Assembly: GCA_002269645.1 (NCBI GenBank)
Contig: NIVC01000895.1
Coordinates: forward strand, 1 to 64,000
DNA: 64,000 bases
From: Macrostomum lignano
Taxonomy: Eukaryota
Direction of reading: 5' to 3'
Positions within the stretch are counted from its first letter, which is position 1; every line of letters begins with the position of its first letter. The notes under the pieces were generated by a model. That model was given only the letters and a program-made list of their open reading frames with translations, searched no databases and was not told the origin of the DNA. A program made the position numbers and the translations under genes. Positions 2,239 to 25,451 of this stretch are shown in pieces.

Positions 2239-3381
2239 ATGTCATCTGACAACAATAAGCCTTTAGATCAGGCTCGATGCGACGCAGCTGCAGTTCGTTT
2301 CTGCACAATGTACTACAAAAGAATGAGCGACACTAGACAGAATTTGACTCCACTATATGCCGATCAGGCTGTGCTAGCTTGGAATGGTCACAGGCATTCA
2401 GGGAAACAGGTTTGATAATTTTATTTTCATTTTATTTTTTGTTGTTTGATTTTTTGAAAAGTTGTAGTCTTAAGGTTTTTACGATCATGTGAAGAGTTGT
2501 ACAGTTTTGTGAAGGTTTGTAAAGTGTTGGGAACGTTTTGTACAGTCTTGTAAAGGGTTGTGCAGTCTTGGGAAGGTTTGTGCAGTCTTAGGAAGATTTT
2601 GCAGTCTTGGGAAGGTCTGTGCAGTCTTGTGAAGGGTTGTAACGTCTTTCAAAGGTTTGTACAGTTTTAGGAAGGTACAGTCTGAAAGTATGAAGTCGTG
2701 AAAGTTTCGTAGGATTGCAATTTTAAAAGATTTAAGATTCTGGCGTCATAAATGATTCAAGGCGATGTTTTATGTTGTGTGCTATCATATTCCAAGGACA
2801 TTATCCTGAAGGGTAGCAGTATTTATCTGTTTTGTACTATACAAATTAGCATTTTGCCCCATTAAATTAGCGCGTTGATCCAGTTTTACAGACTCCACCC
2901 TGTCTCAGGCTCGAAATTATTCAAGAAAAGAAAATTAGAAGATTACAGGAAGACTTCAAAGAGCCAAATCCAGTGCGAGAGCATAACGTGTAAGAGAAAA
3001 GCCCCCCCCCCATCAGCCAAGCCGATAAACAGTGGCTTTCTTCTTGTCCGCTTGGATCTGACTTTGCCCTCTCTCCTTACTGCTCTCCCATTGGCTGAGC
3101 TAGATTAGGCCTGCCCACTGAATTCTTACCCGCAGGAGATCGGGCAGTTCTATGCTCAACTACCCAATTGCATAGCGCAGCCCTACAGCGTTAGCGCTCA
3201 ACTCCTTGACGGCGACATATTTCCGCCGAACTCGCTGCTTGCTACCTGCCACGGTCAGGTAAAATTTCTACGCTGCGAAGATCGCCGGCATAAATTATTT
3301 TCTCAAGCGTTCGTCCTGTCACGCCAGTCCGACGGCACCTTCGTCATCTTATCCGACACATTTCGCACTAGCGAGCCCTGA
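2239..3381 (+). CDS. NXT1: NTF2-related export protein (NXT1/p15), 2 exons: 2239-2409, 3136-3381
   Basis: Hand translation gives MSSDNNKPLDQARCDAAAVRFCTMYYKRMSDTRQNLTPLYADQAVLAWNGHRHSGKQ|EIGQFYAQLP...FSQAFVL...ILSDTFR. This matches NTF2/NXT motifs (F...YY, LY...A.L.WNG, F.Q.F.L, SD.FR). Phase-0 GT..AG intron. Missed by the ORF track. Confidence 0.88.
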
Positions 3382-3894
3382 CTGTTGCGCGTCTGTTTGC
3401 TTGGAACTTGTTGCTTTATTATACAGTAGTAACCGTGTTAATCCCATTGTAAGTGTGTACTTTTGTTACCATAGTGACGAAATGTTATTCGTCTACACGA
3501 TACAATGGTGTAATAATAAGAGTCAATCTTTGTTCCTATGCTGATTGCTACACTTTTAAATTCTGGCTTAATTAAGTTTTAATATGCGCGTAGGTAATAC
3601 AGTATTTATGTATGTTGTATTTTAAAAGTACATGTTCTCATTTGTACTATATGGTGTTTAACTGCATTTCTTCTGCACGATGATGATTTGATTTAACCCA
3701 GATTTTTTCAATTGACTCTTTTTACAATTAAATTAGCTAACTAGTATATGTGGATGTCGACACCTACTAAAAACGACCTGCCCCTAAAAAATTCCCTTAT
3801 TAACTCCTTTAGGAAGAATCACCCCTTCATCCTAAAGATTCGACCCTTTACCCAGGAAAGTTAATAAATCCTATTAATTGACCCTGAATAATGG

Positions 3895-6800
3895 CCTTTT
3901 TTCCTGAGAAATCACCACTTTACCTGCTAGGATCACCACTTTACCCGGTAGGATCATCACTTTACCTGGTAGGATCACCACTTTACCTAGTAGGATCACC
4001 ACTTTACCTGCTAGGATCACCACTTTACCCGGTAGGATCACCACTTTACCTGGTAGGATCACCACTTTACCTAGTAGGATCACCACTTTACCTGCTAGGA
4101 TCACCACTTTACCTAGTAGGATCACCACTTTACCTGGTAGGATCACCACTTTACCTGCTAGGATCACCACTTTACCTAGTAGGATCACCACTTTACCTGG
4201 TAGGATCACCACTTTACCTGGTAGGATCACCACTTTACCCGGTAGGATCGCCACTTTACCTGGTAGGATCACCACTTTACCTAGTAGGATCACCACTTTA
4301 CCTGCTAGGATCACCACTTTACCCGGTAGGATCACCACTTTACCTGCTAGGATCACCACTTTACCTGCTAGGATCACCACTTTACCCGGTAGGATCACCA
4401 CTTTACCTGGTAGGATCATCACTTTACCTGGTAGGATCATCACTTTACCCGGTAGGATCACCACTTTACCTGCTAGGATCACCACTTTACCCGGTAGAAT
4501 CACCACTTTACCCGGTAGGATCACCACTTTACCTGCTAGGATCACCACTTTACCTGCTAGGATCACCACTTTACCTGCTAGGATCACCACTTTACCTGCT
4601 AGGATCACCACTTTACCCGGTAGGATCACCACTTTACCTGGTAGGATCATCACTTTACCCGGTAGGATCACCACTTTACCTGCTAGGATCATCACTTTAC
4701 CCGGTAGGATCACCACTTTACCTGCTAGGATCACCACTTTACCCGGTAGGATCACCACTTTACCCGGTAGGATCACCAATTTACCCGGTAGGATCACTAC
4801 TTTACCTGCTAGGATCACCACTTTACCTAGTAGGATCACCACTTTACCTGGTAGGATCACCACTTTACCTGCTAGGATCACCACTTTACCTAGTAGGATC
4901 ACCACTTTACCTGGTAGGATCACCACTTTACCTGGTAGGATCACCACTTTACCCGGTAGGATCGCCACTTTACCTGGTAGGATCACCACTTTACCTGGTA
5001 GGATCACCACTTTACCCGGTAGGATCACCACTTTACCCGGTAGGATCACCACTTTACCCGGTAGGATCACCACTTTATCTGGTAGATTCACCAATTTACC
5101 TGAAAGAATCACCACTTCACCTCGTAGAATCACCACTTCACCTCGTATAATCACCACTTCAGCTGGTAGAATCACCACAACTTCACCTGGTAGAATCACC
5201 ACTTCATCTGAAAGAATCACTACTTCACCTGGTAGAATCACCACTTTACCTGGTAGGATCACCACTTTACCCGGTAGGATCACCACTTTACCTGGTAGGA
5301 TCATCACTTTACCCGGTAGGATCACCACTTTACCTGCTAGGATCACCACTTTACCCGGTAGGATCACCACTTTACCCGGTAGGATCACCAATTTACCCGG
5401 TAGGATCACCACTTTACCTGGTAGGATCACCAATTTACCTGCTAGGATCACCACTTTACCCGGTAGGATCACCACTTTACCCGGTAGGATCACTACTTTA
5501 CCTGCTAGGATCACCACTTTACCTAGTAGGATCACCACTTTACCTAGTAGGATCACCACTTTACCTGCTAGGATCACCACTTTACCTGGTAGGATCACCA
5601 CTTTACCTGCTAGGATCACCACTTTACCCGGTAGGATCACCACTTTACCTGGTAGGATCATCACTTTACCCGGTAGGATCACCACTTTACCTGCTAGGAT
5701 CACCACTTTACCCGGTAGGATCACCACTTTACCCGGTAGGATCACCAATTTACCCGGTAGGATCACCACTTTACCTGGTAGGATCACTACTTTACCTGCT
5801 AGGATCACCACTTTACCTAGTAGGATCACCACTTTACCTGGTAGGATCACCACTTTACCAGCTAGGATCACCACTTTACCTAGTAGAATCACCACTTTAC
5901 CTGGTAGGATCACCACTTTACCTGGTAGGATCACCACTTTACCCGGTAGGATCGCCACTTTACCTGGTAGGATCACCACTTTACCTGGTAGGATCACCAC
6001 TTTACCCGGTAGGATCACCACTTTACCCGGTAGGATCACCACTTTACCCGGTAGGATCACCACTTTATCTGGTAGATTCACCAATTTACCTGAAAGAATC
6101 ACCACTTCACCTCGTAGAATCACCACTTCACCTCGTATAATCACCACTTCAGCTGGTAGAATCACCACAACTTCACCTGGTAGAATCACCACTTCATCTG
6201 AAAGAATCACTACTTCACCTGGTAGAATCACCACTTTACCTGGTAGGATCACCACTTTACCCGGTAGGATCACCACTTTACCTGGTAGGATCATCACTTT
6301 ACCCGGTAGGATCACCACTTTACCTGCTAGGATCACCACTTTACCCGGTAGGATCACCACTTTACCCGGTAGGATCACTACTTTACCTGCTAGGATCACC
6401 ACTTTACCTAGTAGGATCACCACTTTACCTGGTAGGATCACCACTTTACCTGCTAGGATCACCACTTTACCTGGTAGGATCACCACTTTACCTGCTAGGA
6501 TCACCACTTTACCCGGTAGGATCACCACTTTACCTGGTAGGATCATCACTTTACCCGGTAGGATCACCACTTTACCTGGTAGGATCACCACTTTACCTGG
6601 TAGGATCATCACTTTACCCGGTAGGATCACCACTTTACCTGCTAGGATCACCACTTTACCCGGTAGGATCACCACTTTACCCGGTAGGATCACCAATTTA
6701 CCCGGTAGGATCACCACTTTACCTGGTAGGATCACTACTTTACCTGCTAGGATCACCACTTTACCTAGTAGGATCACCACTTTACCTGGTAGGATCACCA

Positions 6801-7312
6801 CTTTACCTGCTAGGATCACCACTTTACCTAGTAGGATCACCACTTTACCTGGTAGGATCACCACTTTACCTGGTAGGATCACCACTTTACCCGGTAGGAT
6901 CGCCACTTTACCTGGTAGGATCACCACTTTACCTGGTAGGATCACCACTTTACCCGGTAGGATCACCACTTTACCCGGTAGGATCACCACTTTACCCGGT
7001 AGGATCACCACTTTACCCGGTAGGATCACCACTTTATCTGGTAGATTCACCAATTTACCTGAAAGAATCACCACTTCACCTCGTAGAATCACCACTTCAC
7101 CTCGTATAATCACCACTTCAGCTGGTAGAATCACCACAACTTCACCTGGTAGAATCACCACTTCATCTGAAAGAATCACTACTTCACCTGGTAGAATCAC
7201 CACTTCACCTGGTCGAATCACCACTTCACTGGTAGAATCACCACTTCACCTAGTAGAATCACCAATTCACCTGGTAGAATCACCACTTCACCTGGTAGAA
7301 TCACCACGAAAC
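3895..7312. repeat. 21-bp minisatellite (ACTTTACCTGGTAGGATCACC) with a roughly 1-kb higher-order period
   Basis: Direct reading; a diverged marker block recurs at about 5074, 6064 and 7033. Confidence 0.97.
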
Positions 7313-7671: not shown

Positions 7672-7791
7672 GACTTCTAGTTTTCAATCTGACTGAGGGC
7701 ACACTGTTACACTTTGTCAACTTATTGCACTTTGTCTACTTAAGTCACTTGAGATGCTCGTACACACTCATTTCAGAACTTTGCAATCAGC

Positions 7792-8265
7792 ATGTTTAAT
7801 TTACGCTGCCTAGTCAATACGACAGCTTCGCTGCGTCAATGTAAGCTATCGCCAACCCTGTCTTCACTGCTTACGTCATCGCTATCGACTTCCAGCACCG
7901 CCGGTTCTATGCACAATAAAATAGCCGAAATGGTCAAAGCCAACAAGGTTGTCGTCTTTATGAAAGGCGTGCCGGAGGAGCCACGTTGCGGTTTCTCCAA
8001 TGCCGTTATTAAAATTCTCGAATTTCACGGCTTAAAACCGGACGTGTATTCCGCGCACAACGTTCTCGACAATGAGGAGCTGAGACAGGATATTAAAACG
8101 TTTAGCGATTGGCCAACTATTCCTCAGGTGTACTTTAATGGCGAGTTCATCGGCGGCTGCGATGTGCTGATTAAAATGCATCAAAATGGCGAATTGATTG
8201 AGGAGTTGAAGAAGATTGGTATCAAGTCCGCTTTGCTGGCTGCTCAGGAGGAGAAGAAGGAATAA
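7792..8265 (+). CDS. GLRX5: Monothiol glutaredoxin 5, mitochondrial
   Basis: CGFS active site, [23 protein letters not shown], and an N-terminal Ser/Arg-rich transit-like peptide. Single exon. Confidence 0.96.
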
Positions 8266-8550: not shown

Positions 8551-10958
8551 CATAGGCGTAGGAACATTTCAAAAAGTGGGGAGAGGGGCAGGTTCAGTGA
8601 CGGATTTAGGGTGCACGCCCCCGTTGAGTTAGATTTTTTATATGGAAAATGCACATTATCATGCACCGATTATTTTCAGAATCCATCTTGTCAGCACTCA
8701 TTTTATAAAGCGCCGCAGGTACTCATTTTAGCGCCGCAGGTACTCATTTTAGCTCCGCAGGCACTCATTTTAGCGCCGCAGGCACTCATTTTAGCGCTGC
8801 AGGCACTCATTTTAGCGCCGCAGGCACTGATCTTGGCGCCGCAGGCACTCATTTTGGCTCCGCAGGCACTCATTTTGGCGCCGGAGGCACTCATTTTAGC
8901 GCCGCAGGCACTCATTTTATCTCCGCAGGCACTCATTTTAGCGCCACAGGCACTGATCTTGGCGCCACAGGCACTCATTTTGGCGCCGCAGGCACTCATT
9001 TTGGCGCCGCAGGCACTCATTTTGGCGCCGCAGGCACTCATTTTGGCGCTGCAGGCACTCATTTTGGCGCCGCAGGCACTCATTTTGGCGCCGCAGGCAC
9101 TCATTTTAGCGCCGCAGGCACTCATTTTGGCGCTGCAGGCACTCATTTTAGCGCCGCAGGCAATCATTTTAGCGCTGCAGGCACTCATTTTAGCGCCGCA
9201 GCCACTCATTTTAGCTCCGCAGGCACTTATTCCGGCGCCGCAGGCACTCATCTTTGCGCCGCAGGCACTCATTTTGGCGCCGCAGGCACTCATTTTAGCG
9301 CCGCAGGCACTCATTTAAGCGCCGCAGGCACTCATTTCGGCGCCGCAGGCACTCATCTTGGCGCCGCAGGCACTCATTTTGGCGCCGCAGGCACTCATTT
9401 TGGCGCTGCAGGCGCTCATTTTGGTGCTGCAGGCGCTCATTTTAGCGCTGCAGGCACTCATTTTGACGCCGCAGACACTCATTTTTGCGACGCAGGCACT
9501 CATTTTGGCGCCGCAGGCACTCATTTTAGCGCCGCAGGCACTCATTTTGGCGCTGCAGGCACTCATTTTAGCGCCGCAGGCAATCATTTTAGCGCTGCAG
9601 GCACTCATTTTAGCGCCGCAGCCACTCATTTTAGCTCCGCAGGCACTTATTCCGGCGCCGCAGGCACTCATCTTTGCGCCGCAGGCACTCATTTTGGCGC
9701 CGCAGGCACTCATTTAAGCGCCGCAGGCACTCATTTTGGCGCCGCAGGCACTCATATTTGCGCCGCAGGCACTCATTTTGGCGCCGCAGGCACTCATTTT
9801 TGCGACGCAGGCACTCATTTTAGCGCCGCAGGCACTCATTTTGGCGCCGCAGGCACTCATTTTTGCGACGCAGGCACTCATTTTAGCTCCGCAGACACTC
9901 ATTTTAGCGCCGCAGGCACTCATTTAAGCGCCGCAGGCACTCATTTTGGCGCCGCAGGCACTCATCTTTGCGCCGCAGGCACTCATTTTGGCGCCGCAGG
10001 CACTCATTTTAGCGCCGCAGGCACTGATCTTTGCGCCGCAGGCACTCATTTTGGCGCCGCAGGCACTGATCTTTGCGCCGCAGGCACTCATTTTGGCGCC
10101 GCAGGCACTCATTTTAGCGCCGCAAGCACTTATTTTAGCGCCGCAGCCACTCATTTCGGCGCCGCAGGCACTCATCTTGGCGCCGCAGGCACTCATTTTA
10201 GCGCCGCAGGCACTCATTTTAGCCCCGCAGGCACTCATTTTGGCGACGCAGGCACTCATTTTAGCTCCGCAGACACTCATTTTAGCGCCGCAGGCACTCA
10301 TTTAAGCGCCGCAGGCACTCATTTCGGCGCCGCAGGCACTCATCTTGGCGCCGCAGGCACTCATTTTTGCGACGCAGGCACTCATTTTAGCTCCGCAGAC
10401 ACTCATTTTAGCGCCGCAGGCACACATTTAAGCGCCGCAGGCACTCATTTTGGCGCCGCAGGCACTCATCTTTGCGCTGCAGGCACTCATTTTGGCGCCG
10501 CAGGCACTCATTTTAGCGCCGCAGGCACTGATCTTTGCGCCGCAGGCACTCATTTTGGCGCCGCAGGCACTCATCTTTGCGCCGCAGGCACTCATTTTGG
10601 CGCCGCAGGCACTCATTTAAGCGCCGCAGGCACTCATTTCGGCGCCGCAGGCACTCATCTTGGCGCCGCAGGCACTCATCTTGGCGCCGCAGGCACTCAT
10701 TTTGGCGCTGCAGGCGCTCATTTTGGTGCTGCAGGCGCTCATTTTGGTGCTGCAGGCACTTATTTTGGCGCTCCAGGCGCTATGTTTTGTCGCCCTGCAG
10801 CAAAATGCATTCATGCAAAGCAGCAAAAACTAAAAATAAGTCTACATTTTACATTTTAAATGTGGAGGGGACAGATACCATTACTGCCCCCCCCCCATTT
10901 TAAAAAGTAGGGGGGGGGGCATGGCCCCACTGCCCCCCCTTCCGTTCCTACGCCTATG
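8551..10958. mobile_element. Non-autonomous TIR element carrying a 21-bp satellite
   Basis: CATAGGCGTAGGAAC at 8551-8565 and its exact reverse complement GTTCCTACGCCTATG at 10944-10958, with G/C-run subterminal sequence. Confidence 0.7.
8707..10790. repeat. 21-bp minisatellite (CTCATTTTGGCGCCGCAGGCA)
   Basis: Direct reading; about 100 units. Confidence 0.97.
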
Positions 10959-11038
10959 AGATCCTTTGTTTTGTTCTAAAAGCAGATATATTGTGCTATT
11001 TGCAGAAATAAACCAAGTTTTTTTGCAACATCTTTCAG

Positions 11039-12280
11039 GTCAAGCAACGCCAACCAATACGCGTGTTCATTCGCGAGCCGCACCACGAGGTGCTATTGGA
11101 TATCTACCGTTTAATCGGTTCAAAGCGTTTGCCGTTTTCTCGTTTAACACTGTTGCACCTGGACTCGCATCCTGATCTGCAGTTGCCGCCTAAGTTAACA
11201 GCCAACGATTGCCTCGACGCTGGAGTTGATGGCGCGTTGCAATCGCAACTTAGTATTGGGAGTTGGATCCTGCCAGCTGCCTATGCTGGCCACTTTGATA
11301 GCGTTGTTTGGCTGCGACCGCCTTGGTCGGACCAGCTGCCGGATATAAAGCGTCGTCTAGTTCGTATTGGTCCTTGTCCAGTTGAATCGTCAGCCGCTGC
11401 TGCTGTTGAAGCACCTTTACGTTTAGACTGCGGCTTGCCTTATTTTGCGGCCGAGTGTATGTACTGTCACCATTTGACCTCCATACCCGAAGCAGAGATA
11501 GGCAAGAATAGTAATAAGATTAGCCAATTTCACCTGTGCTCGCACGAGTTTAGCAGTGCACTGGATTGCGATTGTGTCGGCCAATCGGGTCTCGGTCAGG
11601 CTGCCGCTTACGTTGTCGATGTTGACTTGGACTATTTCTCTACGCAGGACGCTCCGTCGAAGTGGCTACCAGCTGATCTGATTAGCGCCGCTCGTAGCGT
11701 CTACGGCTGGCGCGGTGGCGAAATTGTCGAAGAGGGCCCGGCTCTTGAGACGGCTTGCAGGCGAAGGGAGCAACGCTTGGAGCGGTTGGGTCAAATCATG
11801 ATGGAAGTTTCCAGTGAATCGGATGGTAAAACTGAAGCTAGTACGAGTAGCGAGGCTATCAACGTTGATGAAGTTGATGACGCCGAGAAGGATGATGCTC
11901 AAGATCGAACTGCTCTTCGTTCTCTGTTCGCGTGGGCTCGTCGTCATGGAAACGGCGATAGTAGCGCTACTGCTAATGCTACAACATGGACGCCAGAAGA
12001 TTTACACGAAGTACTCAGTGGTCAAGACGGTCTTGGTGGCGACCTACCGCATCGAGTCTCTTCGCCAGACGAGATTCGCCTGATGATTGACAGTTTTGGC
12101 AATTGGTTGAGTGAGTTGTCAGCTCGATACGGTCCTCCTGCTTGCGTCACCATTGCCAGATCGTCTCTAGACGATTACTGCCCAACTGAACAGGTGGAGC
12201 TCATTCAGACTGAGTTAATTGCCAGTCTGCGTAAAGTACTAGAGCCTTACTATCGCGTTGATGTTGTTTGCAATTATTAA
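11039..12280 (+). CDS. C5orf22: UPF0489/C5orf22-like protein; no in-frame ATG at the 5' end
   Basis: HHEVLLDIYRLIGSKRLP, LLHLDSHPDL, LSIGSWILPAAYAGHF, VDVDLDYFS, LPHRVS and VTIARSSLDDYCP match the family throughout. The frame is open from the acceptor TTTCAG (ends 11038); there is an in-frame TAA at 11009-11011. Confidence 0.9.
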   Translation, partial: VKQRQPIRVFIREPHHEVLLDIYRLIGSKRLPFSRLTLLHLDSHPDLQLPPKLTANDCLDAGVDGALQSQLSIGSWILPAAYAGHFDSVVWLRPPWSDQLPDIKRRLVRIGPCPVESSAAAAVEAPLRLDCGLPYFAAECMYCHHLTSIPEAEIGKNSNKISQFHLCSHEFSSALDCDCVGQSGLGQAAAYVVDVDLDYFSTQDAPSKWLPADLISAARSVYGWRGGEIVEEGPALETACRRREQRLERLGQIMMEVSSESDGKTEASTSSEAINVDEVDDAEKDDAQDRTALRSLFAWARRHGNGDSSATANATTWTPEDLHEVLSGQDGLGGDLPHRVSSPDEIRLMIDSFGNWLSELSARYGPPACVTIARSSLDDYCPTEQVELIQTELIASLRKVLEPYYRVDVVCNY

Positions 12281-12735
12281 TGCGAAAGAAAATTTATCGA
12301 GGAAGAAGTGAAATAACTTATTTTACTAAAGCATTTTAAATTTGTGTTCATTTACTAAGATTCATACGCGCTTTCAAGTAAAATTAGTGTTGTAGTGTTA
12401 GTATGAAAGAGGTCCATTTAAATCGGATTGTGTTTTGCTTTTTTTGTTGGATTAACAAGATTTTCCCATGGCACACGAGGCCCTTCAATTTTCACTAGGG
12501 AGACAGCTGACCATCATGACCTTTCCTTGAATGGCTCCGGCATAGGTTCTCTTGATATTTAATATTTATACTGTCTTAGTATTTAGCTGCCTCCACCCTA
12601 CCCTAGCCAATGTTGCAATAACATGGACTGTAGGTAAAGTACACATTCATAATTTCAAGGCACCTTAGTAGTCAATTACAAGTGCTACATTTTATGAATC
12701 GTCAATTGTCAATGTAAATTTTTATATTCAGCCAA

Positions 12736-15049
12736 ATGTCGCATCAACAGCTGCCTCGTAGTCAACAACACAAGCAAGAAGCAACGAAGACGCCAATTTA
12801 TTTAGACTACAATGCTACTAGTCCAATGTCTTCGCAGTCTCGCGATGCCGTTATTGAAGCTATGTACACCGGCTGGCAGAATCCGAGCGTTTGCAGTCGG
12901 ACTCGCAGCATAGTTGAAGTTGCTCGCAAATCTGTAGCAGATCTGATTGGCTGTCAGCCAGCAGAGTTGATTTTCACATCCGGCGGTACAGAGAGCAATA
13001 ATTGGGCTGTGAAACAGGCTGTTTGGATGTACCGGAATTTGGATAGAGCTGAGAATGCTATTGTTGGTCGGCCTCATGTTGTAGCCAGCTGTATTGAACA
13101 CGACTCGATTCGTAAACCTATTGAACGACTGTTGGCTCTAGGTTTAGTTGATGTAACCTGGTTGCGCATCGACTCAAGCACTGGCGCTCTGGCAAATGTT
13201 GGCGATCTCGTTGCTGCATTGCGCTGGCGCAATACCTGTTTAGTGACCGTGATGTGGGCAAATAATGAGACTGGGGCCATATTTCCCATAGCCGAGGTAT
13301 AAACCAGTGATGTTTACAAAAAGTGTCTGTAAAAACAACTTTTAAGTGCCTCGCTTGACACTTAAGGGAGGTTTCATATAATGCGTAAATTTCAAAAGTC
13401 GCCAAAAATCAAATCAACATGCCAATTATGAAAAAAGCAGAAAACAAGAAGAAACAATACCTAAATTATGAGGCTTAAAACTTTTCTGTGATGTGAAATT
13501 TAGGTCTTGGGAAAGCACCCCATCCTAATCGCAGCCGGTTAGTCCTCGAGTCCTCTTCTCCCGCCTCATCTTCCTAATTTCCTCGCTCCTCTTATATTCT
13601 CTCCTGTCATCTCCCAACTCATCTCTCATCTCATCTTCTCTCTCCCCTTTCATCTCTTATCTCTAGTCTTTAGTCTCTCCCCTCTCCTCTCTTCCTTCTC
13701 CTTTCCTTTCTCACTAGGCCCGCGGCCATGAGCTGGATTCTTTATCTGGCCCCTAAGGTAAAAAAATTGCCGACCCCATGATTTAAAGACTTGAACTAAG
13801 ACGTCCGTTAAAAAACTCAACATCGCACACACTTAGTTGAAAAAATCACGCGAACAAATAATTTCGCAGATTGCAAATGCGCTCTCGGAATGGCGTCGCC
13901 TAAATAGCCTGACAGTCGATTCGTCGTGTTCCTCCTATGCCAACTCTGGCCTGCCATTGTTCCACACTGACGCTTGTCAAGCTGTCGGCAAAGTGCCTGT
14001 CAAAGTTCCCAATGGATTAGATCTCCTAAGCTTGGCTGGTCATAAATTTCAAGGACCCAAAGGTGTTGGGGCGCTGTATTGTAGCGCTAGATTGCGCGCT
14101 AAATTGGCGCCACTGCTGCTTGGCGGCGGACAGGAGAATGGCGTCAGGGCTGGCACTGAGAATACACCGGGACTTGCCGGTCTGGGGGCAGCCGCGCGTC
14201 TGTCGAAGACTCAGTTGGATGATGTTGATGGCAGACAGCCTCTGATGGTACAGCTGGCTGAGATTCGAGATCAGCTGCGGGATAGACTGGTAATTCTGGG
14301 TGTTGAATTGGATTTCCTCTGTGTGTCATTCCTCCTTCGAAACCACCGAAAGTCAATTCGATATCCCAGTAATATGTCAGTCGCTCAATAAAAGCTTCAA
14401 TTCCAATGGCTAGATATCTCAATAGTCATAACGTCACTTTGATTCCAATCCGATGGCTAGATATCTAGATATCTCAATAATCGCTCTGATTCCAATGGCT
14501 AGATATCTCAATAATCGGTTTGATTCTAGTAGCTAGATAATTAAATAACCGCTTCAATTCTAGATTATCTTTAAATGCTATAATTTTCCCTAACATTTCA
14601 CGCAGCTGAACTCCATTAACGATCCGGAGATGTCAGAATTCACCGGCTTTCGACTAATCGTGAACAATAATTTTCCAAACGGTCCCACTCTGCCAAACAC
14701 GCTCAACGTGTCAGTTGTATCAACAAAACTATTGCAATCAGCTGGTCAGAGTAAAGAATTAGCAACTGATAATAATACTGACGATATGGAACTGCGCGAA
14801 GCTGCTTTAGCTAGGAACTATCTACTTAGTAGAGGCCGCATTCTTGCCAGCGCCGGTTCAGCTTGTCACGCCGCCGCCAATTCCGGCGCATCCGCTGTTC
14901 TGTTAGAATCTGGCGTCAATCCTATGGCTGCCAGATCAGCTGTTAGGCTGAGCGTTGGACCGGATACTACCATAGACGATGTTCTGGGCGCGGTTGAGGA
15001 ATTCAATGCGGCTCTGCTGCAGTGGCGAATTGAGCATCCTTCTCGTTGA
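12736..15049 (+). CDS. SCLY: Selenocysteine lyase (NifS-like, PLP class V aminotransferase), 3 exons: 12736-13296, 13870-14289, 14606-15049
   Basis: [48 protein letters not shown] (PLP lysine), GGGQE...GTEN and SAGSACH. It lacks the NFS1-type SGSACTSASLEPS motif and a mitochondrial presequence. Both introns are phase-0 GT..AG. Confidence 0.85.
14395..14570. repeat. Short degenerate tandem repeat (ATTCCAATGGCTAGATATCTCAATA) in SCLY intron 2
   Basis: 3-5 diverged copies. Confidence 0.65.
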
Positions 15050-15905: not shown

Positions 15906-16066
15906 TCCCTAGAAAATTGTTATTTTTCTCATCTCTACTATGAACTTTACTTGAGCAATCAAAGAATCAATATCAAGTCTTCTACAAAAACGCACTCCCA
16001 CAGCGAGCAGCAGCTCAGTAGCAAGTTGTCAATCAAGCAAGCCATCCATCAGCAGTGCAGCTTGGC

Positions 16067-19000
16067 ATGGCCTCAAACAGCGTGATCAAGCCGAAGACTC
16101 AAGCCGGCAAGCGAGCATTAGCCAGGCGAGAAGAGAAGGTGATAGAAAACACAAAGTCATGCTTACTCATCCGCGGCGGCAATACTAGCGAAGCCATTGG
16201 TTCCTGTCTAAAAGATTTGTACAGCTTAAAAAAGCCGCACGCTCTGATGCTGAAACGCCGCAATCCAATTTTACCATTCGAAGAGATTAGCTTTGTTGAA
16301 AAGATGAGTCGAAAGTACGACTGCTCGCTATTCGCTTTTGCAAGCCATTCGAAAAAGCGACCGAATAATCTGGTGCTAGGCAGGCTATTCAACTACCAGC
16401 TGCTGGATATGATTGAGTTTGGCGTTGAAGGCTACCAGCCATTGTGTACTTTTCCCGTTGCCAAGGTGCCTGTTGGCACTAAGCCATGTCTTAGCTTTCA
16501 GGTGAGTCTAATTGCTGAACATTATTCAAATATTATTTTATTGTAGTTTGGCTTAGACAGGATGACTGTGATAACTGTGATCTAGACATGTGGCTACTGT
16601 AATCTAGACGTGTGATTGCTGTCATCTAGACATTCTGATTGCTGTCATCTAGGCATTGTGATTGCTGTCATCTAGGTTTTGTGATTGCTGTCATCTAGGC
16701 ATTGTGATTGCTGTCATCTAGGCATTGTGATTGCTGTCATCTAGGCATTGTGATTGCTGTCATCTAGGCATTGTGATTGCTGTCATCTAGAGATTATGAT
16801 TACTGTTATCTAGACATTGTGATTGATGTCATCTAGGCATTGTGATTACTGTTATCTAGACATTGTGATTGCTGTCATCTAGACATTGTGATTGCTGTCA
16901 TCTAGACATTGTGATTGCTGTCATCTAGACATTATGATTACTGTTATCTAGACATTGTGATTGCTGTCATCTAGACATTGTGATTGCTGTCATCTAGACA
17001 TTATGATTACTGTTATCTAGACATTGTGATTGCTGTCATCTAGGCATTATGATTACTGTTATCTAGACATTGTGATTGCTGTCATCTAGGCATTGTTATT
17101 GCTGTCATCTAGACATTGTGATTGCTGTCATCTAGACATTGTGATTGCTGTCATCTAGGCATCTAATGAGTGAAATCTAGATGGGATATGGCCGATCAAT
17201 ATATTTAAATATGTTTTGGCCATCTTAGCCAATAATCTTGGCATCTAGACATCCTAGGCTATGATTTAGACAAATTAGTGTGCTATGACTGATTTGATTA
17301 AACCTGGTGAATGCGATCTGAAAAATCTCTCCTACACCTTAAAACAATTATTTTAAGGGCGAAGAGTTCGACAGCGACCCAACTCTGATGGCTATTAAGA
17401 ACCTGCTGCTGGACATGTTCCAAGGTCCTCGGGTTGAGAAGATTCGTCTCCAAGGCATTGAGCACCTGATTCAATTCTCCTATTGCGATGGCCAGATTCT
17501 TGTCAGGTGAGGCTTTTGTGACGCATATCATTGATGCGACTCCTACTTTCTTAATGATATCCCAGAATATTCCCAAAAAGAAAGCAAATCTGGGGGCGAC
17601 TTGTGACGATTTACCGGCAGACTCGAATTTAACTGACGAAGACAAATACAGCAGAGGCAAATTGTGTAGCGGTAGCACTCGATGATAGTGACGAATGATG
17701 CGGGCGGTGGCCGCAGTTCTCATTTATTGTAACGGTATGAGTGGATAGTTAGGGCTCATTATTATCAATTCCGTCTGGGTAGTTAATAGAGATGAGCCGG
17801 AGTATTTGCTGAATCAGTAAGGAATGCACTGGGCGGCTGCGCAACAATAAGATAGATGATAGATGATAGAGCGAGTCGATGAGCCTGAGGCAGTGGCGAT
17901 GATGTGATGACAGTGATCGTGTGGTGGCGGTACTCGTAGCGAGAACCCTTTACAGACGGTAGTGGTGGCGTGGTCGAGAATTGGCAGAGGCGTGGTTTAG
18001 AACTGTGGCAGAGCGAGACGGGTAAACAGCAAACAAGGGTGAAAAACAGGGGTCTAAAAACAAATGTCTAACCACGGGCGCCCCAGCCAGACAGGACTGA
18101 TAAGGAGCGGGCTGGGGTGGGTGCGCGAGGAGAGCTTAATATCAGGCTAGCATAATATATGCGCGGCTTTTCTATTGGCCGGCGAGAAAAACCAACTTGA
18201 AAACAGAAATTATCGATCGCATTGTACATAGGCTTTACAAACGCACGCAATGTTGTTTAAAATTCTTTGGGCATTATTATAAGCAGACGTTAGAGTACGA
18301 GACCATTAAATTAACAATATTATAGCTTTCGCTAAAACGGCCCTTGTCGGGGCTACCTCAACTGACAACGTCACAGACTCAAGCGACTGTAAATGCGACG
18401 GATATGCGACTGTTGAGTCACGAGCGCATCATATAACAGCTCCTGTGATGGATGACCCTTGTTCAATCGCATCAATCAGCCGCTGGCGATCTGCTACAGG
18501 AATTGCTGGCGCCACTGAATGGCGTCGCTTTCAGGCCAAAGACGAGCAAACCGGGGAGGAGGGAGGGACAGAGAGCCATAAAATCTCAGTCCGATTCCCG
18601 TTTTGAATGGATTTTTCCCATATTGAATGTCCAAAGTTATAGTCTATGGCCAAGCCTCCCTCAGTAGACTTTGCTAAACTGCTTAAGTTCATGACTAGGG
18701 TGCGATCTGTGGCCTGGCTTGAATGTCTATGGCGTCCCGTTTTGATTGTCTCTTGACTCTTGGAGGAATTTTTTTGGCGACTTGTACCGTGACATCTTGC
18801 TGTTTTAGAGTCTTCTAGAGGAACTTCTTTCCTATTTTTTACCTGTGTTACCTACGACTCTTGAGGCGACGCAAGTGACTGGGGATCAGTCGTCAGATCA
18901 ACCATCCCAAACCGAACCCGCAGATCCTATCGCATCCTGCTGAAGAGCTCCGGTTCGAAAATTCCCCGAGTCGAGCTGTTCGAAATGGGTCCGCGTTTCG

Positions 19001-19284
19001 GTTTGCGGCTGCGCAGGCACAAGCTGGCAACGCCGGAGCAGTTTAAGCAGGCTCGCCGTCAGCCCAAAGTTGCCACGATCAAGAAGATCAAGAACATTGT
19101 GCCGGACGATGGTCTGGGCAATCGTCTCGGTCGTGTGCACGTCGGCCGGCAAGAGTTGGACAAACTGCAGACAAGAAAGGTCAAGGCTTTGAAACGACCT
19201 CGAGAGGATTTCAATGCCGCCGATGGGAAGAAGATTAAAAAACGACGTTTGTCGGATAATAAGAAGCAAAAGAATAAGGGATGA
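16067..19284 (+). CDS. RPF2: Ribosome production factor 2 (Brix domain), 3 exons: 16067-16501, 17358-17506, 18924-19284
   Basis: KPKTQAGKRAL, SHSKKRPNNLVLGR and DMIEFG; a middle exon found by hand (GEEFDSDPTLMAIKNLLLDMFQGPRVEKIRLQGIEH); then RSYRILLK..PRVELFEMGP and LDKLQTRKVKALK. Intron phases 0 and 2 are consistent. Confidence 0.93.
16565..17170. repeat. 23-bp minisatellite (TGTGATTGCTGTCATCTAGRCAT) in RPF2 intron 1
   Basis: Direct reading. Confidence 0.93.
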
Positions 19285-20355: not shown

Positions 20356-20398
<43 letters not shown>

Positions 20399-20416
20399 TT
20401 GCTACTACTACTACTG

Positions 20417-20458
<42 letters not shown>

Positions 20459-20660
20459 TTGCTACTACTACTACTGCTACTACTACTACTAATACTACTA
20501 CTACTGCTACTACTACTACTACTACTACTGCTACTACTACTACTACTACTAGTACTACTGCTACTACTACTACTAATCCTATTACTAATACTTCTACTAC
20601 TACTACTGTTATCATTATTATTTTTTTTTGTTACTATTATTATTATTGGTATTATTACTG
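20323..20660. repeat. (ACT)n/(ATT)n microsatellite
   Basis: Direct reading. Confidence 0.95.
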
Positions 20661-20729
20661 CTATAAGGATCGTTAAATTCCAGTTTTTACGCGTCACCCA
20701 TTAAATCCTGGCTAAACTTGATCAAATTC

Positions 20730-21371
20730 ATGCCAATCATCTCTATGGCTCGACTCGTTCTCATTCGCCGACTTTGCACGGCAGCCTTAGAGACCCAGCA
20801 GCAGGAAAAGTTGAAAGCAAATTTCTGGCATCGTCAGTATTCGAATCTGTCCTCTTATCTACGCCGGCTTCTAGTAGATTACCGACAAGCTGCCGCGGAA
20901 GCCCTGGCCGACATGGAGTCTGCACCGCGTAAAACTCTGGCTTACCTGTTTGTGGCCTCATTAGGCATTGTGGCTTGGCGAAACAATCCAAGCTACGGGG
21001 ATTACACTAATCAGTTGCGACAGTGCAGCCTACAGTTGGGACAATTATCCCCATCGGTTAGAAGTCCCCGATGCGCTGAGTTTATTAACCGACTGTGCCA
21101 ATTGAGAGATGCTCAACAATTGAGACGGTTGAATCTGGGATTTGTCTCGTTGCTATGGGCTACGGAGCTGAGCTCGGACTGTCGACTGCCCGATCACACT
21201 TGCGAGCATTTGAAACCGCGCTGGACTCGATTGAGACCAATTGATGTTGGCTGTTTCTCTCGCTGGATTCTGCTGTCGGGTGCCCTCAGGGACTCGGATG
21301 TCAACGAGGCGGAGTGGGGACAGTTGAGGCTTTCACCGGCTGATCCTGTAATTAGCGATGCCTGGGACTGA
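20730..21371 (+). CDS. TIMM29: Mitochondrial TIM22 complex subunit Tim29
   Basis: LLVDYRQAA, a transmembrane segment, LRRLNLGFVSLLW, CEHLKPRW and DVGCFSRWILL..RDSDVNE.EW match C19orf52/TIMM29 as I recall it. First ATG at 20730. Confidence 0.8.
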   Translation: MPIISMARLVLIRRLCTAALETQQQEKLKANFWHRQYSNLSSYLRRLLVDYRQAAAEALADMESAPRKTLAYLFVASLGIVAWRNNPSYGDYTNQLRQCSLQLGQLSPSVRSPRCAEFINRLCQLRDAQQLRRLNLGFVSLLWATELSSDCRLPDHTCEHLKPRWTRLRPIDVGCFSRWILLSGALRDSDVNEAEWGQLRLSPADPVISDAWD

Positions 21372-21633
21372 TGTGTCTGAGGCTATGCTAATTTTAGTTA
21401 TTAAACTGTTTCAAACTGTTTAGAAAAATACATATGGAAATCGGCATTTTTGTTAACGAAAAGTTTTTTTTGTGTTGTAGCATCTTCCAATTTTATATCG
21501 ATTGGCGTTGGTATTAAACAGAATTTAATAGCTAATAATTTCTGTATTGATTTTTCAAGTGTGTTTGTATTTAAACAAACTAATAGAACCATGCCATTCC
21601 GCTTACCGTTTAGCGAGCATGCATAACTTTGCC

Positions 21634-22575: not shown

Positions 22576-22734
22576 TATCTAACCGCCGCCATCAGCATGA
22601 ACCTCATGGTAGGAACCTATAATTACAAACCATTCGTCTAGTATGCATACTAGCTATCTCATATTAGAAGTCATAAATGTAAAAGGTCAAAGCACTTCAC
22701 GCACTGACTTTAACTACATGTACATCTTACTGCC

Positions 22735-23969
22735 ATGAGCTCGCAACGGGGCAACGCCAATCGAAGTAGGCCTCAGAAACACCAGAATAGTCATGCATTC
22801 AAGAACAGCATCCATGACACTTCTCAGCGTACAAAAACTGTCAATCAACTGAATTTTGGCGGCCTCACCTGTCAGCGCTGCAAAGATATTTTAGACTGGA
22901 AGGTGAAGTATAAAAAGTACAAGCTGCCTACTCAGCCAAGGAAGTGCGTGCGTTGCGAGAAACGGTGCATACAGAGCGCTTATTTCACTGTGAGTTGAAC
23001 TTCTGTACGGATTCTATGGGTTGCTTTTCAAGCTTTTGATTTAGTCATCTATTTTGGTATAGTGAATGAGCTCCCACACTATGACCAGTTTTTATGGGCA
23101 TGACTAGTAGCACTATGACCAGTTTCTATGGGCATGACTAGTAGCACTATGACCAGTTTCTATCGGCATGACTAGTAGCACTATGACCAGTTTCTATGAG
23201 TATGACTGGTAGCACTATGACCAGTTTCTATAGCTATGACTAGTAGCACTATGACCAGTTTCACTATGACCATTTTCTATGGGTATGACCAATTTCTATG
23301 GGTATTAAAAGCAGCACCATGACCAGTTTTTATGAGTATAACAAGTAGCACTATGACCAGTTTCTATAGCTATGTCTAGTAGCACTATGACCATTTTCTA
23401 TGGGTATGACCAGTTGCACTATGACCAGTTTCTATAGCTATGACTAGTAGCACTATGACCATTTTCTATGGGTATGACCAGTTGCACTATGACCATTTTC
23501 TATGGGTATGACCAGTTGCACTATGACCATTTTCTATGGGTATGACCAGTTTCTATGGGTATTAACAGTAGCACTATGACCAGTTTCTATAGCTATGACT
23601 AGTAGCACAATGACCAGTTTTCTATGGTATCTCTTCTCTCTCTCTCTCTCCTAGGTGTGTCAGAGCTGCGCCCGTGAACGAGCCGAATGTCAGAAGTGCG
23701 CCCAGCAGCGAGAGCTGACCCCCGCAGAGGCGCCATCGGTGGCAAATCAGTCAGCCGGAGCGGCAGCGGCCGCAGCTGCCAACCTCGACTCGGAGATGCA
23801 GCAGCTGCGCGAACGGGACAAGCGAACGTTTCTGCGACTGTTGCAGGCGGAACGGTTCGAGACTGCCGCACAGGCTTCGGCTTGGATCCGGCACCGGCTG
23901 GGAGAGTCAGATGATGGGTCAGGTGATGACGGAGAGTACGAAGAAGAAAGCGAAGAAGACAATCAATGA
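22735..23969 (+). CDS. C9orf85: C9orf85-like (DUF2039) Cys-rich protein, 2 exons: 22735-22989, 23655-23969
   Basis: MSSQRGNANRSRPQKHQN, CQRCKDILDWKVKYKKYK, KCVRC, VCQSCA...CQKCA and an acidic tail. Phase-0 intron. Confidence 0.9.
23078..23620. repeat. Minisatellite of about 34 bp (CACTATGACCAGTTTCTATGGGCATGACTAGTAG) in the C9orf85 intron
   Basis: Direct reading. Confidence 0.9.
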
Positions 23970-24112
23970 AAAATGCCTGCAACTTGGAATTGTTAAACTG
24001 ACATGCTTTTAGTAATAATCTTGTACCCGATTCAAATATATACGTAACAGTCAGTTTATGGTATTATGGAATTGAAAATGCTTTTTTACCTTTTTAATTT
24101 ATTAATCCATGT

Positions 24113-24477
24113 AGAGCCCAGTGGTCCAGTGCGGCGCTCTGATGTCCCAGCGGCCCAGGCTCGATTCCAAGTGCAGTCACATTAATTTGGGGCTGAATTG
24201 GAATCTCATCTTGGCTCTGCTCGTGCAATTAACGCCTTTGAAGGGCCAACCCCCAAGGCGCAGTGAAGTGTACATGCCTAACGATAAATAAAGTTAGGGC
24301 CGCTGTACACTCCTGTGTGAGTGTGTGCCTGTGCGTCTGACTGCGTACGTATCCGCGCGCTTGTGTGCCTGCTCAGGGGAGTCGGCGGAATGGGCAGCAA
24401 TGCCTCTCGCCGGTTGTGTGACAATGTCGCTTAAAGTGCGCCAGGGTGCACCCAGCCCCTGCCTGTAATCTAAAAAG
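24113..24477 (+). mobile_element. tRNA-derived SINE-like element, near full length
   Basis: A-box-like GAGCCCAGTGG and B-box-like GGCTCGATTCC, followed by a body shared with copies at 41873, 44430, 46776, 50320 and 51895; A-rich end. Confidence 0.72.
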
Positions 24478-24491
24478 GGTTCCCTAGTATT

Positions 24492-24624
24492 GTTGCTATA
24501 GCAACTAGCGTGATTGATCCGGGCCGAGTTATCTCTAGACCCCTTATCGTCTTTAGACTGCTGGTTTCTGGTCTACAAATTCGGGATTCTAGAATAGGCA
24601 CCTCAGCAGTATTGCCATGGCAAC
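24492..24624 (+). promoter_or_regulatory. Two RFX X-box-like palindromes upstream of the SDR ATG
   Basis: GTTGCTATAGCAAC at 24492-24505 and ATTGCCATGGCAAC at 24611-24624. Confidence 0.5.
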
Positions 24625-24665
24625 TAGCGCACATTGAAAAGTACAAGTATACGCTTCCCTCATTC

Positions 24666-25451
24666 ATGGACTCCCTATCCCTAACCGATCGCGTTGCCAC
24701 AGTAACCGGGGCCAGTTCTGGCATCGGTAGAGCAGTGGCTGTCCAGCTGGTTCGCCTCGGCGCTCAAGTCCTGCTGGTCGGCCGCAGCCAGACCGCTCTG
24801 GACGAGACTCTGGCCGCCTGCAAGCAGGTCGGATCGTACAGCTCAGCAGCCACTCTCTCCGCTGATCTGCTTCAACCAGCTGATTTGGCCAAAGTCGTGC
24901 CAGCAGCCGTCAACGCGTTCGGCCGCTTGCACATTCTTGTCAACGCTGCTGGAGCTCTTATCAACGACACCGTCGAGACTTATTCGCCTAGCGCTGCTGA
25001 AGGGCTTCGCCGATTGAATGTTGACACAGCGATCGAGCTGACTCAAGCCGCCGTGCCGCACCTGATCGCCTCCGGTCGGGGCAGCGTTGTTAACGTGTCC
25101 TCCGTAGCTGGTAATTGCGCTTTTCCAAACGTCATGACCTACTGCATGACTAAAGCCTCTTTGGACCAGTTCACCAGGTGTACAGCGCTCGACTTAGCGT
25201 CTAAGGGTGTTCGCGTGAACTCGGTAAATCCTGGCGTGATTGTCACGGAGATTCACAAGCGATCGGGCATGTCCGATGAAGCTTATGCCGCCTTCCTGGA
25301 GCGGTCCAAGACCACGCACGCTCTGGGCAGGGCCGGCCAACCGGAGGAGGTGGCCACTGTGGTGGCCTTTCTAGCCTCGGATGCTGCGAGCTTCATCACT
25401 GGCACCATCGTTCCCGTAGACGGAGGCCGGCATATCATGACACCGCGTTGA
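24666..25451 (+). CDS. Classical short-chain dehydrogenase/reductase (FabG-like), single exon
   Basis: TGASSGIG, ILVNAAG, VNVSS, YCMTK (YxxxK), VRVNSVNPG and ASFITG..VPVDGG. Probable ATG at 24666. Confidence 0.92.
   Translation: MDSLSLTDRVATVTGASSGIGRAVAVQLVRLGAQVLLVGRSQTALDETLAACKQVGSYSSAATLSADLLQPADLAKVVPAAVNAFGRLHILVNAAGALINDTVETYSPSAAEGLRRLNVDTAIELTQAAVPHLIASGRGSVVNVSSVAGNCAFPNVMTYCMTKASLDQFTRCTALDLASKGVRVNSVNPGVIVTEIHKRSGMSDEAYAAFLERSKTTHALGRAGQPEEVATVVAFLASDAASFITGTIVPVDGGRHIMTPR

What the first reader, a model, noticed from the sequence alone, without database searches (positions are those of the whole stretch)
2239..25451. Candidate polycistronic (operon-like) run of eight co-oriented housekeeping genes
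Seen: NXT1, GLRX5, C5orf22, SCLY, RPF2, TIMM29, C9orf85 and the SDR all lie on +. Once repeats are subtracted the spacers are a few hundred bp to about 1 kb (C5orf22 to SCLY is 455 bp). Several starts have a pyrimidine tract plus CAG acceptor just upstream with no obvious upstream exon (TTTCAG 15 nt before the GLRX5 ATG, ATTCAG 4 nt before the SCLY ATG, TTTCAG at the C5orf22 frame start). Known: nematodes, flatworms and tunicates resolve operons of conserved housekeeping and mitochondrial genes by SL trans-splicing. Inference: most of these genes form one or two operons.
Basis: partly seen in the sequence, partly recalled or inferred. Interest (0 to 1): 0.7.

Follow-up and report, generated by a model that had tools for sequence, protein, structure and literature searches.

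The report
Flatworm trans-spliced operon-like gene cluster
This is a run of eight same-strand housekeeping genes in the flatworm Macrostomum lignano whose messages receive a spliced leader and are at least partly made from shared precursor RNAs, an arrangement already described genome-wide for this species, so it is an ordinary if tidy example.

Summary
The window is bases 1-64000 of contig NIVC01000895.1 of the published Macrostomum lignano assembly Mlig_3_7. All eight genes are real, correctly named and on the + strand, and the three quoted acceptors sit exactly where stated.

- The deposited CDSs of GLRX5, C5orf22 and SCLY start exactly at those acceptors.
- C5orf22 has no start codon of its own, so it needs the AUG that ends the SL.
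- The assembly was polished with RNA-seq. In paralogous copies this overwrote CAG acceptors with the SL's last bases, a footprint of SL-joined reads. The footprint is strong at NXT1, GLRX5 and SCLY, and weaker at C5orf22, C9orf85, TIMM29 and SDR.

Polycistronic transcription is supported for only part of the run. Locus-tag prefixes name transcriptional units, and they join C5orf22+SCLY in two copies (implied in the window) and TIMM29+C9orf85 in one copy. NXT1, GLRX5 and SDR carry separate unit names.

Stop-to-acceptor gaps after removing repeats are 428-998 bp. That is under the published 1 kb operon rule but well above its roughly 100 bp mode.

The phenomenon is already known in this species (15% of genes in operons, up to nine genes each). 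A single eight-gene operon is not shown.

The parts
2160..2167 (+). Probable SL trans-splice acceptor of NXT1, overwritten in the assembly. The window reads ATTTTATG; both paralogous copies read ATTGCATG, which is the last 8 nt of the SL. The exon would start at 2168, 71 nt before the ATG.
   Evidence: This is the only 8-nt SL-suffix match in either paralogous copy.
2239..3381 (+). NXT1 (NTF2-related export protein), 138 aa, exons 2239-2409 and 3136-3381
3911..7307 (.). 21-bp minisatellite filling most of the NXT1-GLRX5 spacer
7771..7776 (+). GLRX5 trans-splice acceptor TTTCAG. In copy A the same six bases read TGCATG, the SL 3' end.
7777..8265 (+). GLRX5. The deposited CDS starts at 7777, so the SL AUG is in frame and adds MNFAIS. 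The gene's own ATG is at 7792.
8710..10778 (.). 21-bp minisatellite in the GLRX5-C5orf22 spacer. Spacer length differs among the three copies: 2773, about 4600 and about 1160 bp.
11033..11038 (+). C5orf22 trans-splice acceptor TTTCAG (TTTCTG in copy A)
11039..12280 (+). C5orf22 / UPF0489, 413 codons with no genomic start codon. There is an in-frame TAA 9 codons upstream, the first Met is at residue 141, and the Pfam domain begins at residue 9. The initiator AUG must come from the SL.
12726..12731 (+). SCLY trans-splice acceptor ATTCAG (ATTATG in copy A)
12732..15049 (+). SCLY (selenocysteine lyase), three exons, own ATG at 12736. The SL AUG is out of frame and opens a 10-codon upstream ORF. 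Locus tag Mlig033541g2, the second gene of its transcriptional unit.
15996..16003 (+). Candidate RPF2 acceptor TCCCACAG (CTG in copy A). Weak evidence only.
   Evidence: Single-base changes of this kind are common noise between the window and copy A.
16067..19284 (+). RPF2 (Brix domain), 314 aa, multi-exon with a minisatellite in an intron. Its trans-splicing status is unresolved.
20730..21371 (+). TIMM29. Deposited CDSs start at 20733, right after an 'ATG' whose upstream base varies among copies (TTCATG / TTTATG). It is probably a TTTCAG acceptor overwritten by the SL, with the SL AUG acting as initiator.
22727..22732 (+). C9orf85 acceptor. Copy B reads TTACAG; the window and copy A read TTACTG. 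The exon starts at 22733, 2 nt before the ATG.
22735..23969 (+). C9orf85 / DUF2039, 189 aa, exons 22735-22989 and 23655-23969. Its copy-A orthologue is Mlig015320g3, next to TIMM29 = Mlig015320g2.
24666..25451 (+). Short-chain dehydrogenase, 261 codons. Not annotated on this contig. The copy-B CDS starts right after the ATG (TTCATG|GAC). It carries its own transcriptional-unit name (Mlig004297).

Best explanation
The region is a cluster of conserved housekeeping genes in Macrostomum lignano. Their pre-mRNAs are processed by SL trans-splicing, and they are transcribed, at least in part, as polycistronic precursors.

How it works: RNA polymerase II reads through two or more adjacent genes. Each upstream message is cleaved and polyadenylated. 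Each downstream message gains the 35-nt SL at a YTNCAG-type acceptor a few bases before its coding region. The SL ends in AUG, so it has different consequences for different genes:
- It supplies the start codon for C5orf22, and probably for TIMM29 and the SDR.
- It extends GLRX5 in frame.
- It opens short upstream ORFs on NXT1, SCLY and C9orf85.

The units with direct support are C5orf22+SCLY and TIMM29+C9orf85, probably led by RPF2. Whether NXT1, GLRX5 and the SDR are joined to them across the minisatellite-filled spacers is inferred only from distance.

Shown: gene identities, acceptor positions, SL footprints, and shared transcriptional-unit names.
Inferred: the extent of each primary transcript and the number of promoters.
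For: - The window is M. lignano contig NIVC01000895.1. [quoted passage not shown] Operons there are defined as same-strand neighbours less than 1 kb apart after subtracting repeats.
- The deposited CDSs of GLRX5, C5orf22 and SCLY begin exactly at the acceptors. The annotation pipeline cut transcripts at peaks of SL-containing reads.
- C5orf22 has no AUG of its own.
- The assembly was Pilon-polished with RNA-seq. In copy A the GLRX5 acceptor TTTCAG became TGCATG and the SCLY acceptor ATTCAG became ATTATG. These are the only multi-base changes of this kind in about 19 kb of alignment on either strand. An 8-nt SL suffix lies 71 nt upstream of NXT1 in copies A and B.
- Locus-tag prefixes name transcriptional units. 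They are shared by C5orf22 and SCLY in copies A and B, and the window's SCLY is g2 of its own unit. They are also shared by TIMM29 and C9orf85 in copy A.
- All seven spacers are under 1 kb after repeat removal.
- No minus-strand genes interrupt the run.
Against: - Spacers of 428-998 bp (stop codon to acceptor) are well above the roughly 100 bp mode reported for operonic pairs.
- NXT1, GLRX5 and the SDR have separate transcriptional-unit names. The C9orf85|SDR break lies in a 699-bp gap without tandem repeats, which suggests an independent start for the SDR.
- Evidence for trans-splicing of RPF2 is a single-base difference of a kind that is common noise.
- Evidence for TIMM29 and the SDR rests on 3-4-nt SL matches that also arise by chance, and on annotation 5' ends that are imprecise in copy B.
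- No reads, TSS data or poly(A) data could be inspected directly.
Confidence: 0.75

Rival explanations
1. There is one operon. A single promoter upstream of NXT1 drives a precursor of about 23 kb covering all eight genes, which is resolved entirely by SL trans-splicing. The published transcriptional units are split only because short reads cannot be assembled through the minisatellites.
For: - All seven repeat-adjusted spacers are under the published 1 kb rule.
- The authors state that transcriptional units tend to split in repeat-rich operon spacers.
- SL evidence, or suggestive SL evidence, exists at seven of the eight genes.
- The 4.5-6.4 kb upstream of NXT1 is gene-free in the other copies.
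Against: - The first gene, NXT1, also appears trans-spliced. That is allowed, but it gives no TSS.
- The unit break between C9orf85 and the SDR lies in a repeat-free gap.
- RPF2 trans-splicing is not shown.
- Eight genes would sit at the extreme of the published size distribution, where 75% of operons have two genes and the maximum is nine.
Confidence: 0.15
2. There are no true operons. Each gene has its own promoter in the spacer upstream of it. SL trans-splicing only trims the outrons. The shared transcriptional units reflect read-through or overlapping UTR coverage merged by the assembler.
For: - Spacers of several hundred bp are long enough to hold promoters. In this species regions up to 2 kb upstream suffice for tissue-specific reporters.
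- 60% of trans-spliced genes are not assigned to operons.
- Most genes here have separate unit names.
Against: - C5orf22 and SCLY share a unit in two annotated copies, and the window's SCLY is numbered g2.
- The authors describe such units as precursor mRNAs with several trans-splice sites.
- The C5orf22-SCLY gap of 451 bp must also hold the C5orf22 3' UTR.
Confidence: 0.1

Closest known systems
Macrostomum lignano operons and transcriptional units (Wudarski et al. 2017, PMC5730564; Ustyantsev & Berezikov 2021, PMC8629364)
   Same: Same species and same assembly. The SL is the same 35-nt sequence ending in ATG. The acceptor motif [T/C]TNCAG matches. Spacers are inflated by repeats and fall under 1 kb once repeats are subtracted. 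The genes are conserved housekeeping genes. Transcriptional units were cut into .g1/.g2 genes.
   Different: Nothing in kind. This locus would be a large example (up to eight genes against a typical two). Its spacers are well above the roughly 100 bp mode.
Caenorhabditis elegans operons (SL2-type)
   Same: Co-oriented housekeeping genes, a polycistronic precursor, and downstream genes that receive an SL.
   Different: C. elegans uses a dedicated SL2 and intercistronic regions of about 100 nt. Here there is a single SL, the spacers run to hundreds of bp plus kilobases of minisatellite, and the SL carries an AUG. The C. elegans details are from my own knowledge and from the comparison.
Flatworm SL 3'-terminal AUG used as initiator methionine (Cheng et al. 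2006, J Biol Chem; recalled from memory, not read here)
   Same: C5orf22 has no genomic AUG and is in frame with the SL AUG. GLRX5 is in frame too.
   Different: Translation from the SL AUG was not tested here. For TIMM29 and the SDR the case depends on reading the assembly's ATG as a polishing artefact.
Ciona / Oikopleura operons
   Same: A single SL type serves both monocistronic and operonic genes, and housekeeping genes are enriched.
   Different: Tunicate operons have almost no intercistronic spacer (from my own knowledge). The spacers here are long and repeat-rich.

Membership tests
M. lignano operon as defined by Ustyantsev & Berezikov 2021 | Immediately adjacent genes share the same orientation and are not interrupted by a gene on the opposite strand | tested here: met
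   Deposited annotation; minus-strand ORFs have no domain match
M. lignano operon as defined by Ustyantsev & Berezikov 2021 | The downstream gene of each pair is SL trans-spliced | tested here: inconclusive
   Strong for GLRX5, C5orf22 and SCLY. Probable for TIMM29, C9orf85 and the SDR. Unresolved for RPF2.
M. lignano operon as defined by Ustyantsev & Berezikov 2021 | Intergenic distance is under 1 kb after subtracting repeats | tested here: met
   Stop-to-acceptor distances minus TRF arrays are 428-998 bp, and distances from the transcript end would be shorter. The next gap, SDR to Ank, is 1874 bp, so the run would end at the SDR.
Operon in the strict sense (one promoter, polycistronic precursor) | A precursor RNA spans two or more genes | tested here: inconclusive
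   Indirectly met for C5orf22+SCLY and TIMM29+C9orf85 through shared transcriptional-unit prefixes. No such link for NXT1, GLRX5 or the SDR. Reads were not inspected.
Operon in the strict sense (one promoter, polycistronic precursor) | No independent transcription start in front of the internal genes | not testable with these tools
C. elegans-type (SL2) operon | Intercistronic region of about 100 nt and a specialised downstream SL | tested here: not met
   Spacers are at least 428 bp. The species is described with one 35-nt SL.
SL-donated initiator AUG | The SL ends in AUG, and the coding frame opens at the acceptor with no AUG of its own | tested here: met
   SL sequence. For C5orf22 there is an upstream in-frame stop, the first Met is at residue 141, and the domain starts at residue 9.

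The most novel reading that the evidence does not exclude
The SL-derived bases found at the acceptors (TGCATG at GLRX5, ATG at SCLY, ATTGCATG upstream of NXT1) could be real germline sequence rather than polishing artefacts. That would mean acceptor sites in some gene copies were overwritten by gene conversion from reverse-transcribed, trans-spliced mRNAs, which would silence trans-splicing of that copy. A tamer alternative is that all eight genes form one operon, near the largest reported in the species (my estimate about 0.15).
Probability: 0.02. Interest if true: 0.75.

Novelty: already known. Interest (0 to 1): 0.22.

Why it matters
For biology, the locus is a clear worked example of flatworm gene organisation. 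It shows conserved housekeeping and mitochondrial genes strung on one strand, an SL that ends in AUG and supplies or shadows start codons, and intercistronic spacers that tolerate kilobases of fast-changing minisatellite. None of this is new for M. lignano.

The practical point concerns the reference itself. Mlig_3_7 carries SL-derived bases at trans-splice acceptors because it was polished with RNA-seq:
- This destroys CAG acceptors. An example is position 22731 in this window.
- It probably creates false ATG start codons, at TIMM29 and the SDR.
- It may help explain why the acceptor motif was found at only 9,551 of 21,754 annotated trans-splice sites. That link is my inference.
- The footprints can be used, as here, to locate trans-splice sites from the assembly alone.

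Tried and rejected
- Transcript contigs carrying the SL: exact-product look-ups for GLRX5, the SDR and TIMM29 with their own ATGs found nothing. The protein clusters hold only NCBI/UniRef entries and no RNA-seq assemblies. SL-joined transcripts could therefore not be read directly.
- Cross-species synteny: the nearest non-Macrostomum GLRX5 contig (P0002) carries zf-AD neighbours, which from memory is an insect-type domain, so it was set aside as uninformative.
- Gene tables in supplements: the locus-tag numbers were not found in the files held for PMC5816591. PMC8629364 has no held supplement.
- RPF2's transcriptional-unit name: the last homology search returned nothing at E<=1e-40, so whether RPF2 is g1 of Mlig015320 remains a guess.
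- SL RNA gene or other ncRNA in the window: none found.
- Single-base AG-to-TG differences as evidence: rejected as standalone proof. They occur about 20 times on both strands between the window and copy A.
- 4-5-nt SL-suffix matches (for example GCATG at the RPF2 and GLRX5 ATGs): rejected, because they are frequent by chance.
- The upstream TTCCAG at 20678-20683 as the TIMM29 acceptor: not favoured. The deposited CDS is 5'-partial from 20733, and no footprint lies at 20683.
- The bacterial promoter/terminator scan was not used, because it does not apply to this organism.
Full report
**Identity of the window.** The GLRX5 ORF is 97% identical to a Macrostomum lignano protein. A look-up of the product that starts at the acceptor (7777-8265) returned contig NIVC01000895.1 of GCA_002269645.1 (assembly Mlig_3_7), with coordinates identical to the window.

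The same assembly holds two more copies of the whole locus. Copy A is on NIVC01000032.1. Copy B is on NIVC01000056.1. Outside tandem repeats, the window differs from copy A at 3.7% of aligned bases and from copy B at 0.5%. Gene order and orientation are the same in all three copies.

**The observation.** All eight genes are real and correctly named:

| Gene | Evidence |
|---|---|
| NXT1 | NTF2 domain; best solved-structure hits are NTF2-related export proteins |
| GLRX5 | glutaredoxin; GLRX5 orthologues as best hits |
| C5orf22 | UPF0489 domain |
| SCLY | best solved-structure hits are selenocysteine lyases, ahead of NFS1 |
| RPF2 | Brix domain; best hits are RPF2 |
| TIMM29, C9orf85, SDR | Tim29, DUF2039 and adh_short domains |

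The deposited CDS coordinates are:
- NXT1 2239-3381
- GLRX5 7777-8265
- C5orf22 11039-12280
- SCLY 12733-15049
- RPF2 16067-19284
- TIMM29 20733-21371
- C9orf85 22735-23969

The SDR (24666-25451) is annotated only in the other two copies. No gene is called on the minus strand within the run, and minus-strand ORFs there have no domain match.

The spacers are dominated by minisatellites. After subtracting these, the stop-to-next-acceptor distances are 998, 704, 451, 711, 774, 428 and 699 bp. The SDR-to-Ank gap is 1874 bp. The + run continues beyond the finding with two more genes.

**What is already published for this species.** M. lignano adds one 35-nt spliced leader (SL), CGGTCTCTTACTGCGAAGACTCAATTTATTGCATG, to about 30% of its genes. 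The acceptor motif is [T/C]TNCAG.

Operons were defined there as same-strand neighbours less than 1 kb apart after subtracting repeats, with the downstream gene trans-spliced. By that rule 15% of genes lie in operons. Most operons have two genes and the maximum is nine. The modal spacer is about 100 bp.

The annotation pipeline built 'transcriptional units' from RNA-seq and cut them into genes at peaks of SL-containing reads and at poly(A) reads. About 7% of units held several trans-splice sites. Genes cut from one unit share its name prefix, for example Mlig030697.g1 and .g2.

**Evidence for trans-splicing at this locus.**

First, the deposited CDSs of GLRX5, C5orf22 and SCLY are 5'-partial and begin at the first base, or first full codon, after the three acceptors.

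Second, C5orf22 cannot start on its own. An in-frame TAA lies nine codons upstream of the acceptor. The first genomic Met is residue 141 of 413. The UPF0489 domain already starts at residue 9. Joined to the SL, the AUG that ends the SL opens the frame as MVKQRQPIRVF. In copy A, where the acceptor is damaged, the annotators fell back on the internal Met and called a 273-aa protein.

Third, and unexpectedly, the assembly itself records SL-joined reads. Mlig_3_7 was polished with Pilon using RNA-seq as well as genomic reads. Reads that carry a few SL bases and are aligned end to end can outvote the genomic bases just upstream of a trans-spliced exon. Comparing the three copies shows exactly this:

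| Gene | Intact reading | Altered reading |
|---|---|---|
| GLRX5 | TTTCAG\|AAC (window, B) | TGCATG\|AAC (A) |
| SCLY | ATTCAG\|CC (window, B) | ATTATG\|CC (A) |
| C5orf22 | TTTCAG\|GTC (window, B) | TTTCTG (A) |
| C9orf85 | TTACAG\|CCATG (B) | TTACTG (window, A) |
| NXT1, 71 nt before the ATG | none | ATTGCATG\|CATC (A, B); ATTTTATG (window) |

**Controls for the footprints.** I aligned about 19 kb of non-repeat sequence per pair and screened both strands. I looked for positions where one copy ends in AG, the other ends in TG, and every other difference in the last 8 nt matches the SL.

Changes of two or more bases occur only at the GLRX5 and SCLY acceptors, both on the + strand. The only 8-nt SL-suffix matches in copies A and B are the NXT1 sites. 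These three sites are therefore solid.

Single-base AG-to-TG changes are common between the window and copy A (about 20). The C5orf22 and RPF2 (16003) cases therefore add little on their own. Between the window and copy B there are only 95 differences in all, and one of them is the A-to-T change in the C9orf85 acceptor. That case is suggestive.

For TIMM29, the deposited CDSs start right after an ATG (20733 in the window and copy B, 20748 in copy A). The base at -4 varies between T and the SL's C at both sites. For the SDR, all copies read TTCATG|GAC, and the copy-B CDS starts at GAC. Both patterns fit TTTCAG acceptors overwritten to (C)ATG, with the SL AUG as the real initiator. However, 3-4-nt matches of this kind also arise by chance, and the annotated 5' ends in copy B are imprecise. 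I rate both cases as probable, not shown.

**Evidence for polycistronic transcription.** The locus-tag names are:

| Gene | Copy A | Copy B | Window |
|---|---|---|---|
| NXT1 | Mlig012923g1 | Mlig012923 g2/g3 | Mlig012923 g2/g3 |
| GLRX5 | Mlig030987g1 | not obtained | not obtained |
| C5orf22 | Mlig005709g1 | Mlig016861g1 | not obtained |
| SCLY | Mlig005709g2 | Mlig016861g2 | Mlig033541g2 |
| TIMM29 | Mlig015320g2 | Mlig032364g1 | not obtained |
| C9orf85 | Mlig015320g3 | Mlig018840g1 | Mlig018840g3 |
| SDR | Mlig004297g1 | Mlig004297g2 | not annotated |

Given the naming convention, C5orf22 and SCLY were assembled as one transcriptional unit in copies A and B, and the window's SCLY is numbered g2 of its own unit. 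TIMM29 and C9orf85 were one unit in copy A. Its g1 is presumably RPF2, but I could not confirm this.

NXT1, GLRX5 and the SDR have their own unit names. The authors warn that units break in repeat-rich operon spacers, which could explain the breaks around GLRX5. The C9orf85|SDR break, however, lies in a repeat-free gap of 699 bp, which hints at a separate start for the SDR.

**Interpretation.** The best-supported picture is a cluster of SL-trans-spliced housekeeping genes that contains at least two polycistronic units: C5orf22-SCLY and (RPF2?)-TIMM29-C9orf85. By the published distance rule the whole NXT1-to-SDR run would count as one operon if RPF2 is trans-spliced, or as two four-gene operons if it is not.

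The rule is a heuristic, though. The spacers here are four to ten times the modal operonic spacer, and no TSS data could be seen. I put about 0.75 on 'partly operonic cluster', 0.15 on a single eight-gene operon, and 0.1 on fully independent promoters.

**Consequences of the SL's terminal AUG.**
- In frame and required for C5orf22.
- In frame for GLRX5, adding six residues.
- Probably required for TIMM29 and the SDR.
- Out of frame for NXT1, SCLY and C9orf85, giving upstream ORFs of 3, 10 and 2 codons. The SCLY and C9orf85 upstream ORFs overlap the main AUG.

Use of the flatworm SL AUG as an initiator has been reported before (Cheng et al. 2006; recalled from memory, not read here).

**Novelty.** The phenomenon, the species-wide operon census, and even the transcriptional units at this very locus are in published data, so the finding is already known in kind.

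The by-product worth passing on is the polishing artefact. SL bases written into the reference at acceptors damage splice sites and may create false start codons. I did not find this described in the papers I read.

Noticed in passing
window 2160-2167, 22727-22732, probably 20727-20732 and 24663-24668; copy A (L001) at the GLRX5, C5orf22 and SCLY acceptors: The reference assembly carries bases of the spliced leader's 3' end in place of the genomic acceptor. This is most simply explained by the documented Pilon polishing with RNA-seq. It destroys CAG acceptors and may create false ATG start codons.
   Followed up: yes
window 55826-55851, minus strand: Inside the nucleolin-like gene and just after a (TGTC)n tract, the sequence reads TAATTATTGGCATG|GCGACTTACTGCGACC. 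The first part resembles the SL 3' end with one extra G. The second part has a 10-nt identity to SL positions 7-16. It is unexplained: it could be a deep polishing footprint at an internal trans-splice site, or chance.
   Followed up: partly
window 45821-52656, minus strand: Three tandem copies of a two-exon NAD(P)H-binding (PF13460) gene, separated by arrays of a 16-bp minisatellite (CTGTCTATGACCTAAA).
   Followed up: partly
window 3911-7307, 8710-10778, 26613-30023 and others: Kilobase-long minisatellites (21-32-bp units) fill the spacers and produce spurious ORFs of up to 1116 codons. Their lengths differ strongly among the three locus copies; for example, the GLRX5-C5orf22 gap is 2773, about 4600 and about 1160 bp. 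The 21-bp unit of 8710-10778 recurs inverted at 41130-41289.
   Followed up: partly
window 30777-38762, + strand: The co-oriented run continues past the finding with an ankyrin/Mab-21-like gene (893-954 aa in the annotation) and a glycosyltransferase-like gene. The strand switches only at about 39.6 kb. The SDR-Ank gap is 1874 bp after repeat removal, above the published operon threshold.
   Followed up: partly
copies A and B (L001 15480-16301; L003 11630-12673, 13343-13885; L004 12603-13701): The deposited annotation of the paralogous copies is uneven. C5orf22 is called from an internal Met in copy A, is frameshifted near its end in copy B, and SCLY is truncated to 180 aa in copy B. Several copy-B CDSs start a few codons inside the true 5' end. 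The SDR is not annotated at all on the window's contig.
   Followed up: partly
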